64,000 nt of DNA, taken from contig CM007991.1 of assembly GCA_002189035.1 (NCBI GenBank), positions 2,604,001-2,668,000 on the forward strand. Direction: 5' to 3'. Position numbers and translations under genes: made by a program. Source of the DNA: Utricularia gibba. Taxonomy: Eukaryota > Plantae > Magnoliophyta. The notes beneath the pieces are model-generated. The model searched no databases, was not told where the DNA came from, and saw only the letters and a list, made by a program, of their open reading frames with translations. Shown here one piece after another: positions 15,367 through 48,372 of the stretch (position 1 is its first letter; each line of letters begins with the position of its first letter).

Positions 15367-16716
15367 TTACTTGCTGTAGTTTGAACTGGCCATCGGCAAC
15401 TGTGTCCAACCTTGATGACCTCCTCTTTGCTTGTGCAGGAGAAGTATCAGCAAGCAAATTGCAGCAATCAGGGGCAATAAAACACATAAACGCCTCAAAT
15501 GCATTCTCCCTATTACATGACCTGCACTGACATCTCCATCAAAGCTGCTCATTGTGTTGTTCATCTTCCATATCTCAACCCCATTAAGAATGGCGACAAC
15601 ACCTTTAGGCAAGCTTATCTTTGATGGCCCTACACCCACTACTATGTTGTCTGAACTCTTGGCATCAACAACAAAATCAGCGTAGAAAGGTGAAGCCAAC
15701 TGTCCACCCGTGACATCTGATAAATCCATATTCTCATAAGCCAAGTTCCCATTTAGATAAATATTGAAGTAGAGGGAGTTTAGGGAGATGCTTGCTATAT
15801 CACAGAAATGCATCCTTATCATGTATTTGTAACCCTTCTGTACATCAAATGACCATGTTATGTTTTCGTTGGGAACAGAAGGGGCAGATCTTTTTAGCAC
15901 TCTTGCTGAGTTGTATACATTATCAGGAGCGACTTCTCTACTTGCTCCACCATCACGGTAATTTATATGGCCACTAAAATGTAATGGTTGGGAGCCCCCA
16001 TCTCCGATCAGGTACTCATCATCCACCACCCATGTTCTCCACAACGAATCATTAAAAGGAGTCAGCTTGAAGCCTCCCATATTCACCCTGTACACAGCTT
16101 CAAACCCACTTCTCAGCAATCCGTAAATCCTCTCATTCACGTCAACATCGATAAATTGTGCAACATCAGAAATCAAACCCCTAGGAGTAGAGATCACTTC
16201 AATAGCGTTCACAAAACTCATTTTCGAGTCCCCAGATGGCACTAACGAAACTTTGATCTCCTTCGAAACAACCGGGATGACAAACTCCTTAATCACCGGT
16301 AAGCTAAAGCTCCTAGGAATACTAAAGTTACCCAACAGCAGAAACCCATTCGCCACAACATGAAATTCAGCCTCAAACAAACTATAAAATTCAGTTTCAA
16401 ACGGATAAAAATGCAAGCGCACCGTGTGCTGAACTCCACGATTTACAATCGGGAACACGTAACTTCCGCGACGGTTGAAGATCCTGGCAGTAGAATACAA
16501 CGGAGAGATACCGGATTCCGTAGCTTGCAGGTCGAAACCATGCCGCGTGAGGGGGTCAGATGTGAAAACTCGGCGGTCGGCATCTAAGGTCCCCGCGGCG
16601 GCGGAACCGCAGTTCACGAGGTAGAGATCGCCGCAGAATGCTGGAGCAGCGAAGAGGAGCGATGTTGAGAACAACAAAGCAAGATGCGGGAGCATTTTGA
16701 TCGTCACCATTGCCAT
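15367..16716 (-). CDS. Malectin-like (CrRLK1L-type ectodomain) single-pass membrane protein without kinase domain, 449 aa
   Basis: Signal peptide, YLVNCGS, YSTARIF, FVNAIEV, YRVNMGG, LWRTW, YMIRMHFCDI, AILNGVEIWKM, then a TM segment, a short tail of about 20 aa and a stop. No kinase sequence lies downstream. Confidence 0.88.
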   Translation of the reverse strand: MAMVTIKMLPHLALLFSTSLLFAAPAFCGDLYLVNCGSAAAGTLDADRRVFTSDPLTRHGFDLQATESGISPLYSTARIFNRRGSYVFPIVNRGVQHTVRLHFYPFETEFYSLFEAEFHVVANGFLLLGNFSIPRSFSLPVIKEFVIPVVSKEIKVSLVPSGDSKMSFVNAIEVISTPRGLISDVAQFIDVDVNERIYGLLRSGFEAVYRVNMGGFKLTPFNDSLWRTWVVDDEYLIGDGGSQPLHFSGHINYRDGGASREVAPDNVYNSARVLKRSAPSVPNENITWSFDVQKGYKYMIRMHFCDIASISLNSLYFNIYLNGNLAYENMDLSDVTGGQLASPFYADFVVDAKSSDNIVVGVGPSKISLPKGVVAILNGVEIWKMNNTMSSFDGDVSAGHVIGRMHLRRLCVLLPLIAAICLLILLLHKQRGGHQGWTQLPMASSNYSK

Positions 16717-17464
16717 AGGAGCGAAACCTCCGTCCGCCCTTCCAAAAAGAAGAATTTACTCGCCATCAAAGCGCGTGGACCACACCAACAAATATCGCGA
16801 TCACCCAAATTTGCATTGCCAGCCAGGCCAGGCCAGCCGTTACTTTCAAATCTAATTTCTTGGCCCAATAATCTTTGAGGCCCAAGCCCAAATGTCAACG
16901 CCGTTGAGAGTAACTCAATTCAACACGCCTCTTTAGACGACGTGCCTGCTTGTCTATTGAATGTAACCCAAGAAATTGCCGCTCTTAATTCAACGCGCTT
17001 ACGCGTCTACTTTTCTCCCCCGACAGATTTAAAAGTACTGGTGTTTTAGGGTTTTCATCATCAGTTGCAACCGCTTCCGCTGCGGCGAGAGGATCGTCCC
17101 GTTGACCTCGGTGAGTTTTCTTTTGAATTTCATTGCCCTAGATTTCCGTGATTGTGAGGGTGCATGCTCCATGTTTGTTGGTTCATGATGTTCCTTGACA
17201 TGTCTTGGGAGGCGTTTTTATGTTGTGATGTCCTGCGCTCTCGAAATCTTCCAGAAGATTTGAAATTTTCACTGCGAGGTTGAAGTGCATGTCTGGACTC
17301 TTCGATATGGTTTTATTAGAGGTTACTTTAGTTTCTGCTGACGCGTGATCCATGGCTGTCTCTCGATCACGGTTGTATCGTATGCTACATGTATGCTGCG
17401 TTTTTTTTCATTATCTTATGTTCGTTGCCTCCTTTCTTGCTCGTGCAGATATTCTGTTACCAAC

Positions 17465-18526
17465 ATGACTCATGCACAACAGACGCATAAGGCTTTTATG
17501 TCTTTCGGAAATCCATTTCGTGTGAGATCATCAAGAGGGTCACAGATGCCTCAAAAGTTCGTCTCCTTATTGGATTCATTTGAGGAGTCTTTGGATAGGA
17601 GGATAAGAGAGCTTAAACCTGAAAGAAGGGAAGACGTCCTTCCGTTATCATGGATGACTTTGGCAATGCGCTCGCTGTGTGAGGTTTATTCTGATGCCAT
17701 AAAACTAATGACTGCCCTGGAGCTGCCTGTTTCGGACTGGGATGACAACTGGGTTGAAGTTTACTTGAACAATAGTGTGAAGTTGCTTGATATTTGCAAT
17801 GCATTCACCTCCGAGATTTCTCGTCTGAAGCAGAGCCACCTCTTCCTAAGATGTGCCTTGCATAACTTGGATGGTGGCTTCCAAAAGCATGTGCAGGCAT
17901 GTTCCTCCTTAGAAGCGTGGAGGCAGCAGATTAATAAAAAGAATCCTAGACTCGAGGACTGCTTCAACATCATGGATGCACTAGTGTTCATGCTTGACCT
18001 TCCTAAAGTCAAGAACTCTACCAAAGGGAAAGTTCTGATGAGAGCCATGTATGGTGTTAAAGTGCTAGCTGTTGCGATATGCAACATATTTGCCGTCGCA
18101 TTGTCCGCTTCACCCAGCAAGTTAACTGACCTACAAGTCTCGGACACATACTTATGGTCAGTTGCTTTTACTGATCTCCAGAACTTTTTAAACTTGGAGA
18201 TTAGAAACTCATACTTGGGTGGGAGTGCCACGGTGCTCAAGGAGCTAGAAGCAGTTGATGTTGGTGTAAAGAAGATACACTCGGTTCTGAAGAACGAGTT
18301 CAACTTCTCCAAAGATGAAGCATTACCAATCCTCACCTCAGAGTTGAGGGAGTCATCAGAAAAATTTTCCCGAGAATTGCATCAACTGAACGAGGAGGTA
18401 GACGGATTCTTCAAGGTGGTTCTGGAAGGGCGTGATACCCTCCTAATGTCAACCTTCGGAGTTAGTGATATTCTCTGCAACAAAGCTGGGAGTATTAACA
18501 GAAAAAATACCCTCATGGCGAGATGA
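17465..18526 (+). CDS. BPS1: BYPASS1-like (DUF793) protein
   Basis: SFGNPF, LSWMTLAM, LELPVSDWDDNWVEVYLNNSVKLLDICNAFTSEISRL. Intronless CDS from ATG 17465, after a likely 5'UTR intron (GTGAGT near 17111, acceptor near 17449). Confidence 0.9.
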   Translation: MTHAQQTHKAFMSFGNPFRVRSSRGSQMPQKFVSLLDSFEESLDRRIRELKPERREDVLPLSWMTLAMRSLCEVYSDAIKLMTALELPVSDWDDNWVEVYLNNSVKLLDICNAFTSEISRLKQSHLFLRCALHNLDGGFQKHVQACSSLEAWRQQINKKNPRLEDCFNIMDALVFMLDLPKVKNSTKGKVLMRAMYGVKVLAVAICNIFAVALSASPSKLTDLQVSDTYLWSVAFTDLQNFLNLEIRNSYLGGSATVLKELEAVDVGVKKIHSVLKNEFNFSKDEALPILTSELRESSEKFSRELHQLNEEVDGFFKVVLEGRDTLLMSTFGVSDILCNKAGSINRKNTLMAR

Positions 18527-18753
18527 AAGAGGCGAAGAACGAATTTTTTCAACTGTAAACTTGGAAATTGTGTTGAAATAGCCCCACTATGTAACTTCTC
18601 AATGATTTTTATGTATCTTTTAGGCTTATGGGAATGAAATCTTGGTGTCTTGAAGGCGTCAAACCAAAAAAAAAAAGTAAAACTCATGGTCTGATGCATC
18701 TTTCAGCTCTGCTGTGCATCACCATGGTTTCTAAGCTTGGAGAACAAATTCCC

Positions 18754-40880: not shown

Positions 40881-41329
40881 ATGAAGAGAAACTGCAGTTT
40901 GGAGCTCCGTCTCGTCACGCCGCCGCCCGTCTCCGCCACGTACTGATTCTCTCCTCTCCACCTATTTTTTTCTCCCACTGATTTAGGATTTTGATCCCTT
41001 TTGTTTCGATTGGTCCTTGTAGATTTGATATGGTCGGCGAGAATCCGAGAAGTGACGAGAGGATAATGACCATCTTCTACAATGGAACGGTTGCGGTCTG
41101 CGACATGACCGAGTTCCAGGCTAGAGCTATCCTCTTGTTGGCGACTCAGGCGAAGGATGAGAAGCGAGTTACGACACCGACGCTGTTGTCCCCTGGTCTT
41201 AAATCGTCGGCGGCGGAGGTGGCCGGACTTTCTATGAAGAGATCTCTGAAGAGGTTTCTTCAGAAGAGGAAAGCTAGAGCAGAGGGTGTTGCTCCTTACT
41301 CTACCCAACATCGAAATGGAGATTGTTAG
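40881..41329 (+). CDS. JAZ8: JAZ7/JAZ8-type (TIFY5) jasmonate repressor, 2 exons
   Basis: Exon 1 40881-40939 gives MKRNCSLELRL (EAR). Exon 2 from 41023 has MTIFYNG (TIFY) and the degenerate Jas motif SMKRSLKRFLQKRKAR. Confidence 0.9.
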
Positions 41330-41589
41330 GCATGCGAGACATGTGCATTTTATTATAAGATATGTTGCAGTCGTGTTCGTTCCTCTGTGGAGCTATGTAT
41401 GGAATGGAATGACTGCCTAGTTTATTCCGATTGTTCTGTAATTCTAGAGAATCTAATGATCCTGTGAACAAACAGGCGATATAGAGGCAGATGGCTAGAA
41501 AACCTTGACGAAGGTTTCTTGTAGCCATCGCTCTGTTCATTACATACTGATCTGCAAGCATGGGGTGAAAGTCTTATAGCCTTTACATC

Positions 41590-42500
41590 CGTCATCATGG
41601 CGGCAGGTGGCTTCTCCGATTGATCGGCAGCCACTCAGCGCCATTGCTTGCTCGAATTGGTAGCGCATCTGCAAAAGAATAGTCCTCCCACTCTGGACCT
41701 TGCAAAAACCAGTCCCCTTTAGAAAAAGTTTAAAACTTTGCGTTGGTATAAAATGAGTTGTGCGTAGAAGTTACATATACACCAGATTCTCATAGTGCCA
41801 AGGCCTTATAGGCATCGGTCCCGCGATCAAAACATGGGCTCGCCCTCCTGCTATGGATTTGCTGCGAGGTATGGCCTGTAGTAACAACCTGTTCAAGAGA
41901 GGTTATCGTTGGTGGCACAGAATCGGGATGTTTGGCTCCATGGTTCGATACATGCTGCTCCAGTTTCCATTGTCAGAACTGCTGCATAGCTCTGAGGAAA
42001 GATAGACAAAAGGAGGCCATTTACATGCTCAAAGGCACACCGAACCAAGCCCATGAATATTCATAAAAGAATAGTCACTCTGATTTGGTATCCCAGCAAA
42101 TCGATAATGGAAATGGGATGCCATCTTCTGCAGTAGCAGACGGGGGAGTAGTCATGATGGGCATCGATATGTTGAAGCCCAGAATACCTGTGGATACATC
42201 AATCATGCTCAAGAAAGCGAAAATTATACAAAAAAAAAACGGAGGCATTTTTCTATCGAAAGATTGCATTTTTATGAATGTGAATATTGCGTTTTTATCA
42301 ACCTTTTTGTATTGTAATGACCGGAAATTGAATGCACTGGTATGTGCTGAATACGAAAAGGAGGTAAATCACAGGAAACAGATGACTGCAGGCGAGAGGA
42401 CAGAGGCAGCGCCTCGTCTTCTTTCATGTCAAAAGGCTGAGGTCTGCGTCAAAGCAATAAAGGGTAAGGGGGCCACTGAACCCAGAACATGGATGTTGCT
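41590..42500 (-). pseudogene. GOX: Glycolate oxidase (FMN-dependent alpha-hydroxy acid oxidase) pseudogene; boundaries approximate
   Basis: Ordered fragments: SMIDVSTGILGFNISMPIM (about 42150-42210), SNHGAKHPDSVPPTITSLEQVV (near 41948), RGTDAYKALAL*ESGVY (TGA at 41792-41790) and LQMRYQFEQAMALSGCRSIGE (about 41610-41675). Also shows frameshifts and a large internal deletion. Confidence 0.88.
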
Positions 42501-42730
42501 CTGAAAAACAAGAGATTCCTAACAGAGCAAAAATCTCTGATGGGACCTCACTCATGCCCTTATCACCCCCACATATCGGCATACATCTTTTCTCGAGGCT
42601 TCATTCTACGCATGTGAAGCCTACCCTTTTAATCTTCTTCATCTTAATGGAACAAATCTGTGAACCCCATGAACGGGTTTTGTACTAAAATGTGGATTGA
42701 AGAAGACAATGATTGGTTTAGTTAGACGAT

Positions 42731-44106
42731 TCAGTAGCAGATTACCAACAGGTAAAAGAAAAAAAGAAGGGGAAAAGGTGCTGGTCTTTCTGCAGCACCA
42801 TGTTGCTCTGTGCTTCCTGTAAAGGCCTTCGGCTTCACGTTGCTGTCACTCTCTGCACTATGATTGCTTTCCGCCCCGGTTCTGTTGCTGGGATTCAAGC
42901 ATTTGGGAATCTGAAATGACTCTGGTTCACGTTCTTGATTGGCGCATAAACCGCTGTTTTCTCTGATATCAAGCCTTTCTCCGAGACGATTAAGGAAATC
43001 CGGTGGAAATGACAGCTCCCCTGTGAGTTGGTTTCTGCTCAAATTGAGTGTATTCAAGTTTTGTAACCTTCCGATTTCCGATGGAACGTCGCCGGTTAGC
43101 ATGTTGTTGTCGAGGGAAAGGGCTGTTAGGTTGGTTAAGCCTGAAAAGGTGGCCGGAATCTGGCCGGTGAGATGGCAGTTGGAGAAACTCGCTACTCTCA
43201 GCCGCGAGAGGGAGCCTAGGAAAGAAGGGAGGCTCGTGTTTAATGGGTTATCCTCCATGATCAGATACTGTAATTGGTGCATAGATGAGAAATTTTCAGG
43301 GATTGGCCCAATGAGCGAATTATGACTCAAATCCAACAAAGTAAGCTTCGCCAATCTTCCGAAATCCTGTGGAAGTTCTCCTTGGAGTTTGTTGAAGCTC
43401 AAATCAATCTTTTCAATATACTGCATATCTCCGACTGCCGCCGGAACTGAATTTCCTAGGAAATTCCAGCTTAAATCAAGGATACCCAGATTTTTCAGAC
43501 TCCCGATTTCTTCAGGGATTCTCCCAGACAGCTTGTTGTGGCTGAGATCAAGCTGCTGGACGCTAAACATCTTGCCGATTTCCGGTGGGATCTCGCCGGA
43601 CAGGTTGTTCTGCGACATACAGAAGATTTTAAGCTTCTCCATAAGTGAGATCGTGGAGGGATTTCTCCAGCGAGCCCAGGGTTCGATACCAGAACTAAAG
43701 TTTCCAAGGAAGTCATGGATTCAAACACATTGCTGCTCAAATGAAACGGAGAAACTGTGAAGCAGCTGACCAGAGAAAGGGTTTTGAGATACGGCAAACT
43801 GCGAAGAGACGCAGACAACGTAGAGGCGTTTTTACAAGGTGGGTCGACAATGTCGGGCCCGACATGAATCTTGGTAACATGAAACACCGATGTTCCTTCT
43901 AGAAGCTCACACTCAATCCCCGGCCACGGAGTTTCGGAGCAAGGAGAAGGATGAGTCTCAGCCCAGGATGAATCTTCCAGAAGAGAACTCATAACTTGAA
44001 AAAGCCCCAACAACTCCCCATCCTCCATATCCCCCTCGCCGGAGCAGAAAAAGACACCATTTCCGGCCAACAAAACAACAACAAGAATAAAAACCTTAGA
44101 ACCCAT
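42731..44106 (-). CDS. LRR receptor-like protein (PII-2/RLP29-like), intronless; apparent 1-nt deletion at 43658-43660
   Basis: Signal peptide, PCSETPWPGIEC, PPCKNAS, about 10 plant LRRs and a hydrophobic C-terminus. The two ORFs join as GEIPSTISLMEKL with one extra base. Confidence 0.88.
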
Positions 44107-44781: not shown

Positions 44782-44975
44782 CGAGGTTGCTCGCTCCACA
44801 AAAAAATAATATTAATTTGTAAAATACATAAATATTTGCAAATATTTTTTCAAACCTAGTGCCACATTTGTTCGTTGCAGAATGTAGAAGTTTGTGAGTT
44901 GGGAACTCCTGCTTCGTTCATCTGCTGCGGTGCAGGGGGAGTTTAGGGGAAAATCAGGGTCAATTGAGGGAAGTT

Positions 44976-45973
44976 ATGGTTTCGATTCGGCCAGATTTGG
45001 GGGTCAGAGTGCGCCCACTGCCTGTTGACCATCTCCATCGGCCTCCTGATTCCTTGATAGTTTTGGTTTTCAACAAAATTCGCGATGTCAAATCCTTGGC
45101 CCAAGAGATTCAATTCTCCAGTCCTCCAAATCGATAAGGTTGTAGTGCAGATCGATTGCGTCATCTCTGGTGACGAATCCTTCGCCTTCGGCTGCCGGGA
45201 TTCAAAAGCCGATGTCTTCCTTTCTTCGGGCTATTCTTTTCTGTGGTCCTTAAACCCTGCAATCCATTTCTCAGCTTACTGCTCCTTCGCACTGTCGCCT
45301 GGTTCTTTATGAAGATTTAGATGATGAAAAGCCGGACAAAACAACGTGACCCACCACTCGCCGACGCAGGTGTTGTTAAACTTTCGCGAGATCCAAGTCC
45401 TGAGGATCGAACTTCCTGGAGGGGAATTATGGATTATCGATGATGGGGTTTTGTTGAAAGGGAAGGCTAATTTGGGCTGCGCGCTTGATAATTTCACTAT
45501 TCTTGGTGTTTCCAGTGTTGCTCACTACGTTGACAAGAACCACAAATGTTGGTGCACCGCAATTGCTGATGATGCCAACTATGTTACTGCCGCTGTAGCA
45601 GATAGCAGCATCGGGAAAGCACTGCCTGCTTCAACCTATAACAGCAGAGCATAAGAAATTGGAAAGTCTAGTTTTGAGTGATGTGGATGGGCAAGGAGTG
45701 AATATCCATGAAGAGACAGCAGCAACTGGAGGAGCTCACAGCCAAGCTGTTATCGGCATCAACAGCATCGAAGAGAACACTCATTCCTGCGATGGAATTG
45801 CCTAAGGGGATGGTTTTAAAAGGAGCAGCTTTGGTTGCAATCAGGCTAAGTAATCAGTGTAAGGAGGAGTCGGTGGGTTAGCAATCAATAGGGTTGCTTC
45901 TGCTTTTGAGGAGCAATTTCCCACTCGATTGTTTTCGACGGAAAGAACTTATTGTCTTGAAATGAACACTTGA
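44976..45973 (+). pseudogene. F-box protein pseudogene (At4g18380/At1g30200/At5g46170 family)
   Basis: PDSLIVLVFNKIRDVKSL, VVVQIDCVISGD, VTHHSPTQVLLNFREI..LRIELPGGEL, LLQPITAEHKKLESLVLSDVDGQG, ASKRTLIPA, RTYCLEMN. These fragments are spread over several frames, with stops and multi-base deletions. Confidence 0.88.
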
Positions 45974-47238: not shown

Positions 47239-48372
47239 TCAGTTCTTTCCTCTTAGTTTCTGGTTGCCCTTATTGCTGTAGCAGAGTTCCTGGCGGCCTT
47301 CGTATCCAGCTAAAAACTGGTGATTGTGGTCGTCGGCGCCGATGAAGAAGCTCGGCGGAGATCCGTCGGGAAACCTCTGGATTGGAGGCAACATTGACGG
47401 CGAAGAAGAATTGGACTGAAGGGTCCCCCTGTTGAAGCCAGCGAAGCCAGAAGATGAAGAGACTGAAAAGCTCCCGTTCATAGAGTAGTCATGGCTTCCA
47501 CTGTTCATGGCGTGGACCAAGTTATCCGGCGCAAAGGAGAAGTGCTGCAGTTCTGATTGGTGGTGCTCAGCGACCGGCGACACACCGAATCCCGGAAAAT
47601 GATTTCCCGTTGACGGTACTTGGCTGGCGCGGGCGGTGGCAGGAGATAGAAGCCCAGAAGAGAAGTAGTCCATCGGAGTAGGAGAAGATTTCATGAAAAA
47701 ATACGACTCTCCGCCGTTGTGTGTCGTTATTCCTGCGTTCAGAAGCTCGGTAAAGGAAGTGGTTTGAGATATAGGATTCAAAGATCCATTTCCCTTCTCC
47801 TTCTCCGCAACTCTGTCCCGAGTTTTCCTAGATCTAGATAGAGAAAGCCCAGAACCTTTACAAGTTTCAGAAATGGCGCTACATGAGGAGGACTTCATAG
47901 CCACATGCTGTGAAAAACTGGGATCGTCGCCGTCGTCCATCTCAACCTCCGGCGATTCAAACCCATGTTGATCGCCGCCGCCGCTATTCGACCGCTTCTC
48001 CTCACTCAGCTGCTTCCGAGAATCAGGGAAAAGAATGCTCATCGGCGGCAGCTCGTTGATGGAACTCGCCGCCGCCTTCAGCAACCACTCAACAGCCTTG
48101 CTCGGCTGGTCGTACCCTAAACGATCCTGCAAATCGTAGAATTGAATTGCTGTGTTTACCGACAGCCGCACACGGCGGTCCCTCAGCCCCTTCGATGTCA
48201 AGACTTTGCTGTGCCTATCTTTTCCCCCACACGCTCGAGAAACCCTTACAATCCTCGACGACGGCCAGCCGTAAAATCTACCCATCGCCGTGAAATCCAC
48301 ACCCCCGCCGTTGTCTACGCCTCTTTCGTTCTCTCCCTCCTCCTCTTCTTCCTGGTACTGCTCCTCCATCAT
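47239..48372 (-). CDS. TCP2: CIN-clade TCP transcription factor TCP2/TCP24-like, 377 aa
   Basis: [60 protein letters not shown], a shortened R-domain and the miR319 site GTLQSN. Confidence 0.93.
47411..47431 (-). promoter_or_regulatory. miR319 target site in the TCP2 mRNA
   Basis: The + strand reads TTGGACTGAAGGGTCCCCCTG. Its first 13 nt are identical to miR319 (UUGGACUGAAGGG...), so the minus-strand mRNA is complementary. Confidence 0.93.

What the first reader, a model, noticed from the sequence alone, without database searches (positions are those of the whole stretch)
41590..42500. Hidden glycolate oxidase pseudogene, decayed by deletion, between JAZ8 and the LRR-RLP
Seen: on the minus strand, GOX-like fragments occur in the correct order. 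They are SMIDVSTGILGFNISMPIM, SNHGAKHPDSVPPTITSLEQVV, RGTDAYKALAL-stop-ESGVY and LQMRYQFEQAMALSGCRSIGE. Only about 160 nt separate the KMAHP-like segment from SNHG, where intact GOX has roughly 160 codons plus introns. The Gly of ALALG is a TGA, the DGGV before RRGTD is lost, and one intron donor (GTAACT near 41776) is retained, so this is an unprocessed copy. The relic starts about 200 bp after the RLP stop, so its promoter appears to be gone. Established: GOX is the core peroxisomal photorespiration enzyme. As I recall, Arabidopsis GOX3 (At4g18360) lies beside the At4g18380 F-box and TCP2 (At4g18390), the same neighbourhood seen here. Inference: this is the dead syntenic GOX3-like locus. The substitutions and large deletion cannot be explained by the homopolymer errors seen elsewhere. 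It would matter biologically if this lineage has lost or reduced a GOX clade.
Basis: partly seen in the sequence, partly recalled or inferred. Interest (0 to 1): 0.75.

Follow-up and report, generated by a model that had tools for sequence, protein, structure and literature searches.

The report
Decayed glycolate oxidase pseudogene at ancestral locus
Between a JAZ gene and an LRR receptor-like gene lies the dead remnant of a glycolate oxidase gene, still in its ancestral chromosomal position but with over half its coding sequence deleted; it is real but looks like ordinary gene loss in a compact plant genome.

Summary
On the minus strand, window 41548-42219 carries recognisable remains of four of the eleven coding exons of a plant glycolate oxidase (GOX) gene: exons 2, 9, 10 and 11. 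They are in the right order and orientation. Against the exons of an intact Jatropha curcas GOX they align at z = 11, 5.7, 8.0 and 7.6 over shuffles. Exon 1 and exons 3-8 leave no trace.

The remains are 73% identical to Jatropha at DNA level. They carry about 25 indels, a TGA in place of the Gly codon of ALALG, and a 16-nt deletion that removes LDGGVR.

Extra non-exonic DNA sits where introns 8, 9 and 10 belong, and GT follows the ends of exons 9 and 10. The copy is therefore unprocessed.

The position is ancestral. In Jatropha an intact GOX lies tail-to-tail with the JAZ8-type gene, exactly as here. The F-box and TCP2 neighbours match Arabidopsis GOX3 (AT4G18360) and TCP2 (AT4G18390). In Genlisea aurea the same slot holds no GOX.

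The genome is from Lamiales, probably Lentibulariaceae. First-reader notes from this scan (unchecked) list many similar eroded pseudogenes in this genome, so this is most likely routine gene loss. Whether an intact GOX survives elsewhere could not be tested.

The parts
42115..42219 (-). Remnant of GOX exon 2 (codes ...SMIDVSTGILGFNISMPIM..., then a frameshifted KMAHP-like stretch)
   Evidence: DNA local alignment to Jatropha exon 2 (L008:18291-18415:-): z = 11 over 200 shuffles, 77% identity. It has an 8-nt deletion and +3, +1, +1 insertions. tblastn E 1.7e-5. Search of solved structures E 2.7e-3.
41992..42114 (-). Non-exonic spacer standing where exons 3-8 and introns 2-8 (about 2 kb in Jatropha) should be; it ends in a pyrimidine tract plus CAG just before exon 9
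   Evidence: No exon 3-8 signal at DNA level (z < 3) or at protein level (z < 2.5). The sequence was read.
41889..41991 (-). Remnant of GOX exon 9 (...TGAACI / SNHGAKHPDSVPPTITSLEQ); the active-site His of SNHG is kept and the Arg three residues later is Lys
   Evidence: z = 5.7, 68.5% identity, with a +10-nt insertion and three 1-nt indels. tblastn E 8.5e-5. Pfam FMN_dh E 1.6e-5.
41852..41888 (-). Junction of exons 9 and 10: 37 nt where 12 nt of exon 10 are expected. It is either a 27-nt GT...AG stub of intron 9 or an insertion
   Evidence: Alignment ends and the sequence. Ambiguous.
41775..41851 (-). Remnant of GOX exon 10, with 4 + 12 nt deleted (LDGGVR) and TGA at 41790-41792 in place of the Gly codon of ALALG
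   Evidence: z = 8.0, 75% identity. tblastn E 1e-3.
41724..41774 (-). Shrunken intron 10 (about 51-58 nt against 122 nt in Jatropha), beginning GTAACT
   Evidence: Homology to exon 10 stops at its last base (41775). Homology to exon 11 resumes at 41723.
41548..41723 (-). Remnant of GOX exon 11 (...LQMRYQFEQAMALSGCRSIGE...); the last 50 nt or so are uncertain
   Evidence: z = 7.6, 73% identity, 15 small indels. tblastn E 3.8e-6 for 41597-41686. Search of solved structures E 9e-3.
41030..41329 (+). JAZ8/TIFY5-type gene, convergent with the remnant (flanking marker)
   Evidence: Pfam tify E 1.8e-9 and Jas motif E 2e-7. Homologues are named TIFY 5A/JAZ8.
42731..44106 (-). LRR receptor-like gene upstream of the remnant, read as two overlapping ORFs (flanking marker)
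   Evidence: Pfam LRR families and LRRNT_2. The reading frame breaks near 43650.
44937..45970 (+). Homologue of the F-box-like gene that neighbours TCP2 in Genlisea and Erythranthe (flanking marker)
   Evidence: tblastn with Genlisea L001:12102-13283, E 8e-39, in several frames.
47239..48372 (-). TCP2-type transcription factor gene (flanking marker)
   Evidence: Pfam TCP E 7e-35. The best homologues are Lamiales TCP2 proteins.

Best explanation
This is an unprocessed glycolate oxidase pseudogene that died in place at the ancestral eudicot GOX locus, which lies tail-to-tail with a JAZ8-type gene and a few genes from TCP2. After constraint was lost, deletions removed exon 1 with the promoter and the whole of exons 3-8. 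Introns 8-10 shrank to stubs. The surviving exons 2, 9, 10 and 11 collected a nonsense codon, about 25 small indels and roughly 20-24% substitutions at first and second codon positions. It cannot encode an enzyme: residues about 1-46 and 88-237 of the TIM barrel are gone, which on spinach numbering includes most catalytic residues. The most likely setting is loss of a redundant copy in a compact, deletion-prone Lamiales genome (probably Lentibulariaceae), with GOX activity supplied from another locus. That last step is an inference.
For: Shown here:
- Homology of four colinear exon remnants.
- Absence of exons 1 and 3-8.
- The lesions.
- Extra non-exonic DNA with GT exactly after exons 9 and 10.
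- The same JAZ-then-convergent-GOX arrangement around an intact gene in Jatropha.
- TCP2 and F-box neighbours, and AtGOX3/AtTCP2 gene codes three steps apart.
- No terminal inverted repeats or repeats around the remnant.
- Functional baseline: Jatropha and Nicotiana benthamiana GOX are identical at 39/41, 34/35 and about 54/60 residues in exons 2, 10 and 11. The remnant is only about 50-60% identical there.

Context: the window's TCP groups with Genlisea (support 83/79). Genlisea has no GOX between JAZ and DEG5. Unchecked scan notes list many eroded syntenic pseudogenes in the same genome.
Against: - Only one outside genome (Jatropha) showed GOX within 10 kb of the JAZ gene. Vitis, Carya, Paulownia, Coffea and Ricinus did not, though their genes are further apart.
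- No read or RNA data were available, so an assembly error and residual transcription are not directly excluded.
- No intact GOX from this genome was seen, so redundancy is assumed, not shown.
- The exon 9/10 junction could also be read as precise intron loss plus an insertion.
Confidence: 0.88

Rival explanations
1. Processed (retrotransposed) GOX pseudogene that landed here by chance.
For: GTTGTT, which matches the first bases of exon 10, follows directly after exon 9, as it would if intron 9 were precisely absent.
Against: - 51-58 nt of non-exonic DNA beginning GTAACT lie between exons 10 and 11.
- A pyrimidine tract plus CAG lies just before exon 9.
- No poly(A) tract follows exon 11.
- Position and orientation match the intact Jatropha gene next to JAZ.
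Confidence: 0.03
2. Gene fragment captured and moved by a transposon (Pack-MULE or Helitron type).
For: Such captures also give colinear subsets of exons with pieces of intron.
Against: - No terminal inverted repeats or other repeats flank it.
- The location is syntenic and the orientation is the ancestral one.
- Divergence is high: 73% DNA identity, with decay at all codon positions.
Confidence: 0.03
3. An intact gene that looks broken because of assembly or long-read homopolymer errors.
For: Neighbouring genes (the LRR gene and the F-box gene) also show single frame breaks that could be errors.
Against: - Six exons and about 2 kb are missing.
- Indels of up to 12 nt lie outside homopolymers.
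- There is a base substitution to TGA.
- About half of otherwise near-invariant residues are replaced.
Confidence: 0.02
4. The remnant is kept because it now serves another role, for example as 3' UTR or terminator spacer for the convergent LRR and JAZ genes, or as a non-coding or antisense RNA source acting on a live GOX copy.
For: It has outlasted a long period of decay in a gene-dense region. It fills the whole space between two genes that point at each other. Some plant pseudogenes overlap lncRNAs (PMC12241627).
Against: No evidence of conservation beyond neutral decay. No structure, repeat or ORF of note on either strand. No expression data.
Confidence: 0.05

Closest known systems
Plant peroxisomal glycolate oxidase (GOX; (S)-2-hydroxy-acid oxidase, Pfam FMN_dh PF01070), e.g. 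spinach 1GOX, Nicotiana benthamiana 5ZBM and the Jatropha gene at L008:15503-18769
   Same: Clear sequence homology in exons 2, 9, 10 and 11. The exon ends are the same where they can be seen. The chromosomal neighbour (JAZ) and the orientation match Jatropha.
   Different: It is not a gene any more. About 53% of the coding sequence is gone, and what remains has a stop codon, frameshifts, the FMN-binding LDGGVR motif deleted and the active-site Arg changed to Lys.
Arabidopsis GOX3 (AT4G18360) locus
   Same: It shares the neighbourhood with an F-box gene and TCP2 (AT4G18390).
   Different: Arabidopsis lacks the JAZ neighbour at that site (from memory), and its gene is intact and expressed in roots (PMC7655567). 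Clade membership of the remnant is untested.
Collinear pseudogenes and short-deletion fractionation after polyploidy (Woodhouse et al. 2010, PMC2893956; Crombez et al. 2025, PMC12241627)
   Same: A gene at a collinear position is being removed piecemeal by deletions between intact neighbours.
   Different: It is not shown here that the loss follows a whole-genome duplication or that a homeologous copy survives.

Membership tests
FMN-dependent alpha-hydroxy acid oxidase/dehydrogenase (FMN_dh), plant GOX type | Significant sequence similarity to family members | tested here: met
   Pfam FMN_dh E 1.6e-5 for one piece. Plant GOX is the top or near-top hit for all three pieces among solved structures. 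Exon-wise z scores are 5.7-11.
FMN-dependent alpha-hydroxy acid oxidase/dehydrogenase (FMN_dh), plant GOX type | Complete (beta/alpha)8 barrel of about 367 residues in an open reading frame | tested here: not met
   Exons 1 and 3-8 are absent. There is a TGA at 41790-41792 and about 25 indels.
FMN-dependent alpha-hydroxy acid oxidase/dehydrogenase (FMN_dh), plant GOX type | Catalytic and FMN-binding residues (spinach numbering, from the literature: Tyr24, Tyr129, Arg164, Lys230, His254, Arg257; the DGGVRRG loop) | tested here: not met
   Only the His of SNHG survives. The Arg three residues later is Lys. LDGGVR is deleted. The other residues lie in the exons that are gone.
FMN-dependent alpha-hydroxy acid oxidase/dehydrogenase (FMN_dh), plant GOX type | C-terminal peroxisomal targeting signal (PTS1) | tested here: inconclusive
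   A shifted frame reads ...AIRL followed by a sense codon near 41575. The alignment there is weak.
Unprocessed (non-retroposed) pseudogene at the ancestral locus | Intron remnants at the ancestral intron positions | tested here: met
   Homology ends exactly at the last bases of exons 9 and 10, each followed by GT. There are 51-58 nt between exons 10 and 11, and CAG with a pyrimidine tract before exon 9. The intron 9 stub is ambiguous.
Unprocessed (non-retroposed) pseudogene at the ancestral locus | Conserved gene neighbourhood and orientation | tested here: met
   Jatropha has JAZ (+) followed by intact GOX (-). The window has JAZ (+) followed by the remnant (-), then F-box and TCP2. AGI codes come from papers.
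Fractionation relic after whole-genome duplication | An intact homeologous copy in a duplicated collinear block of the same genome | not testable with these tools
   Only this 64-kb window of the genome can be read. No second GOX lies within it.

The most novel reading that the evidence does not exclude
The JAZ-linked ancestral GOX locus was lost throughout Lentibulariaceae: gone without trace in Genlisea aurea and a stub here. These carnivorous, partly aquatic plants would then run photorespiration on a reduced or relocated GOX complement, so the loss would reflect lifestyle and not just duplicate loss.
Probability: 0.12. Interest if true: 0.45.

Novelty: new member of a known kind. Interest (0 to 1): 0.2.

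Why it matters
On its own it matters little: it is one more dead gene in a genome that seems full of them.

It is a clean, well-anchored example of how a plant gene is dismantled in place. One or more large internal deletions, loss of the 5' end, shrinkage of introns and many small indels can all be read against an intact orthologous locus.

It also marks the JAZ8-GOX-...-F-box-TCP2 block as an old eudicot neighbourhood. It would gain importance only if a count over the whole genome showed that this lineage has unusually few or no working GOX genes.

Tried and rejected
- The search of protein representatives with the 60-aa piece gave only one repetitive 1364-aa protein (P0001). No GOX passed the E-value bar of that very large library, so it could not supply a reference protein.
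- Exact look-up of the window's TCP protein found nothing.
- Loci around TCP2 or JAZ orthologues in Genlisea, Erythranthe, Paulownia, Vitis, Carya, Coffea and Ricinus held no GOX within 10 kb. One Daucus look-up failed.
- My by-eye guess that 42300-42350 holds a remnant of exon 1 (FSYSAHTSAFNFRSL) was rejected. Exon 1 scores below shuffles there.
- My first reading of AAVLTMETGAACI as exon 8 (GVLTAED) was wrong. It is the start of exon 9.
- Paper searches for Utricularia with glycolate oxidase or photorespiration gave nothing relevant.
- The bacterial-type promoter and terminator scan does not apply to a plant.
- No search, tree or fold with a full-length GOX protein was made, and the GOX-versus-HAOX clade of the remnant was not tested.
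- The third large protein search was not spent, because the identity of the remnant was not in doubt.

Full report
**What is in the sequence**

Three stop-free pieces were searched separately, because the tools do not read through stops. Each found plant glycolate oxidase as its best match among solved structures, at colinear positions of the 370-residue enzyme:
- 42078-42269: residues 52-80, E 2.7e-3.
- 41793-41972: residues 252-301, E 6e-4, plus Pfam FMN_dh at E 1.6e-5.
- 41543-41770: residues 325-354, E 9e-3.

**Getting a reference gene**

The representatives search returned only a repetitive protein, so I looked for an intact GOX through its neighbours.

The TCP gene at 47239-48372 has its best homologues among Lamiales TCP2 proteins, at only about 57% identity. 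The JAZ gene at 41030-41329 (tify and Jas domains) has TIFY5A/JAZ8-type homologues.

The locus around the Jatropha curcas JAZ (L008) carries a called 367-residue FMN_dh gene. It lies 3.6 kb downstream on the opposite strand.

**Anatomy of the remnant**

Each Jatropha exon was aligned locally to the minus strand of 41330-42730 and scored against 200 shuffles.

| Exon | z score | Window coordinates |
|---|---|---|
| 2 | 11.0 | 42219-42115 |
| 9 | 5.7 | 41991-41889 |
| 10 | 8.0 | 41851-41775 |
| 11 | 7.6 | 41723-41548 |
| 1 and 3-8 | all below 3 | no alignment above chance |

- A protein-level retest of 42220-42730 and of the 41992-42114 spacer was also blank.
- A tblastn of all stop-free Jatropha segments against the window plus seven other loci gave hits (E below 0.01) only in the same four colinear places, the exon-10 stretch being hit in two frames.
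- About 47% of the coding sequence is represented. Residues about 1-46 and 88-237 are gone.
- The remnant spans 672 nt. The same stretch of the Jatropha gene spans 2.9 kb.

**Lesions**

- Over 430 aligned bases, identity to Jatropha is 73%. By codon position it is 76%, 80% and 64%. There are 25 gaps of 1-12 nt.
- GGA (Gly of ALALG) has become TGA at 41790-41792.
- A 4 + 12 nt deletion removes LDGGVR.
- In the SNHGAR motif the His is kept, but the Arg is Lys.
- For comparison, the working Jatropha and Nicotiana benthamiana enzymes are identical at 39/41, 34/35 and about 54/60 residues in exons 2, 10 and 11. The remnant is only about 50-60% identical there.
- Inference on age: the excess of roughly 0.2 substitutions per first or second codon position implies a long time since death. 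At ordinary plant mutation rates that is on the order of ten to fifty million years, and less if this lineage evolves fast. This is a rough estimate only.

**Processed or not**

- Homology to exons 9 and 10 stops exactly at their last bases, and GT follows in both cases. After exon 10 the sequence is GTAACT, against GTAAGT in Jatropha.
- 51-58 nt separate exons 10 and 11.
- A pyrimidine tract plus CAG lies just before exon 9.
- No A-run follows exon 11.
- The 37 nt between exon 9 and the aligned part of exon 10 can be read two ways: as a 27-nt GT...AG stub of intron 9, or as intron loss plus an insertion. This junction stays ambiguous.
- No inverted or direct repeats flank the remnant.

Together with the synteny below, this makes an unprocessed gene decaying in place by far the best reading.

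**Synteny**

Gene order in the window is DUF1365 (+), JAZ (+), GOX remnant (-), LRR gene (-), F-box homologue (+), TCP2 (-), and further on RPL14 and a WD40 gene.

- Jatropha has JAZ (+) followed by an intact GOX (-). Its TCP2 carries a locus tag 11 steps away and is reported on a contig of the same length as the one carrying the JAZ gene.
- Papers confirm AT4G18360 = GOX3 and AT4G18390 = TCP2.
- Genlisea aurea has DUF1365, JAZ, DEG5-type protease, LSM, aminotransferase, F-box and TCP. Only about 130 nt lie between JAZ and the protease ORF, and there is no GOX signal.
- The window, in turn, has no trace of the protease, LSM or aminotransferase genes. The two blocks have therefore lost complementary genes.
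- Vitis, Carya, Paulownia, Coffea and Ricinus showed no GOX within 10 kb of JAZ. Their genes are widely spaced, so this says little.
- Ricinus is reported to have a single GOX (PMC7655567). I could not show that it sits in this block.

**Whose genome**

- In a TCP tree the window's protein is sister to the two Genlisea proteins, on a long branch with moderate support (83/79).
- The scan reports 1590 windows for this genome, which is about 100 Mb, and gene density here is one gene per 2-3 kb.
- From memory, this fits Utricularia gibba. That identification is an inference.

**How ordinary is it**

- Unchecked first-reader notes of this scan list 86 entries on eroded or syntenic pseudogenes in the same genome. 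None mentions an intact GOX.
- Piecemeal deletion of collinear genes is a known route of gene loss in plants (PMC2893956; PMC12241627).
- I therefore rate this as a real, nicely documented, but routine pseudogene.
- The only route to higher interest is a whole-genome count showing that working GOX genes are few or absent. I could not run that count.

Noticed in passing
window 43495-43700 (-): The LRR receptor-like gene is split into two overlapping ORFs (43495-44106 and 42731-43642). The frame break lies near 43650, just after ...GEIPP, and is not in an obvious homopolymer. It is either a real frameshift or a 1-nt assembly error.
   Followed up: partly
window 44937-45970 (+): The homologue of the TCP2-neighbouring F-box gene matches the Genlisea protein in at least three pieces in different frames. 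It too is either broken or carries assembly indels.
   Followed up: no
L001 (Genlisea aurea KE528357.1) 16833-18574: In Genlisea the JAZ8-type gene abuts the DEG5-type protease gene with about 130 nt between ORFs. The GOX slot is completely empty there, while the window keeps the GOX stub but lacks the protease, LSM and aminotransferase genes.
   Followed up: partly
L008 (Jatropha curcas) 16215-16560 (-): Intron 8 of the Jatropha GOX gene holds two degenerate extra copies of the start of exon 9 (reading ...SNHGGARQ...), each next to a long A-run. This looks like a small tandem duplication inside the intron.
   Followed up: no
window 47239-48372 (-): The TCP2-type protein is short (377 aa against about 420-480 aa in other Lamiales) and only about 57% identical to its best homologues, consistent with a fast-evolving lineage.
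   Followed up: partly
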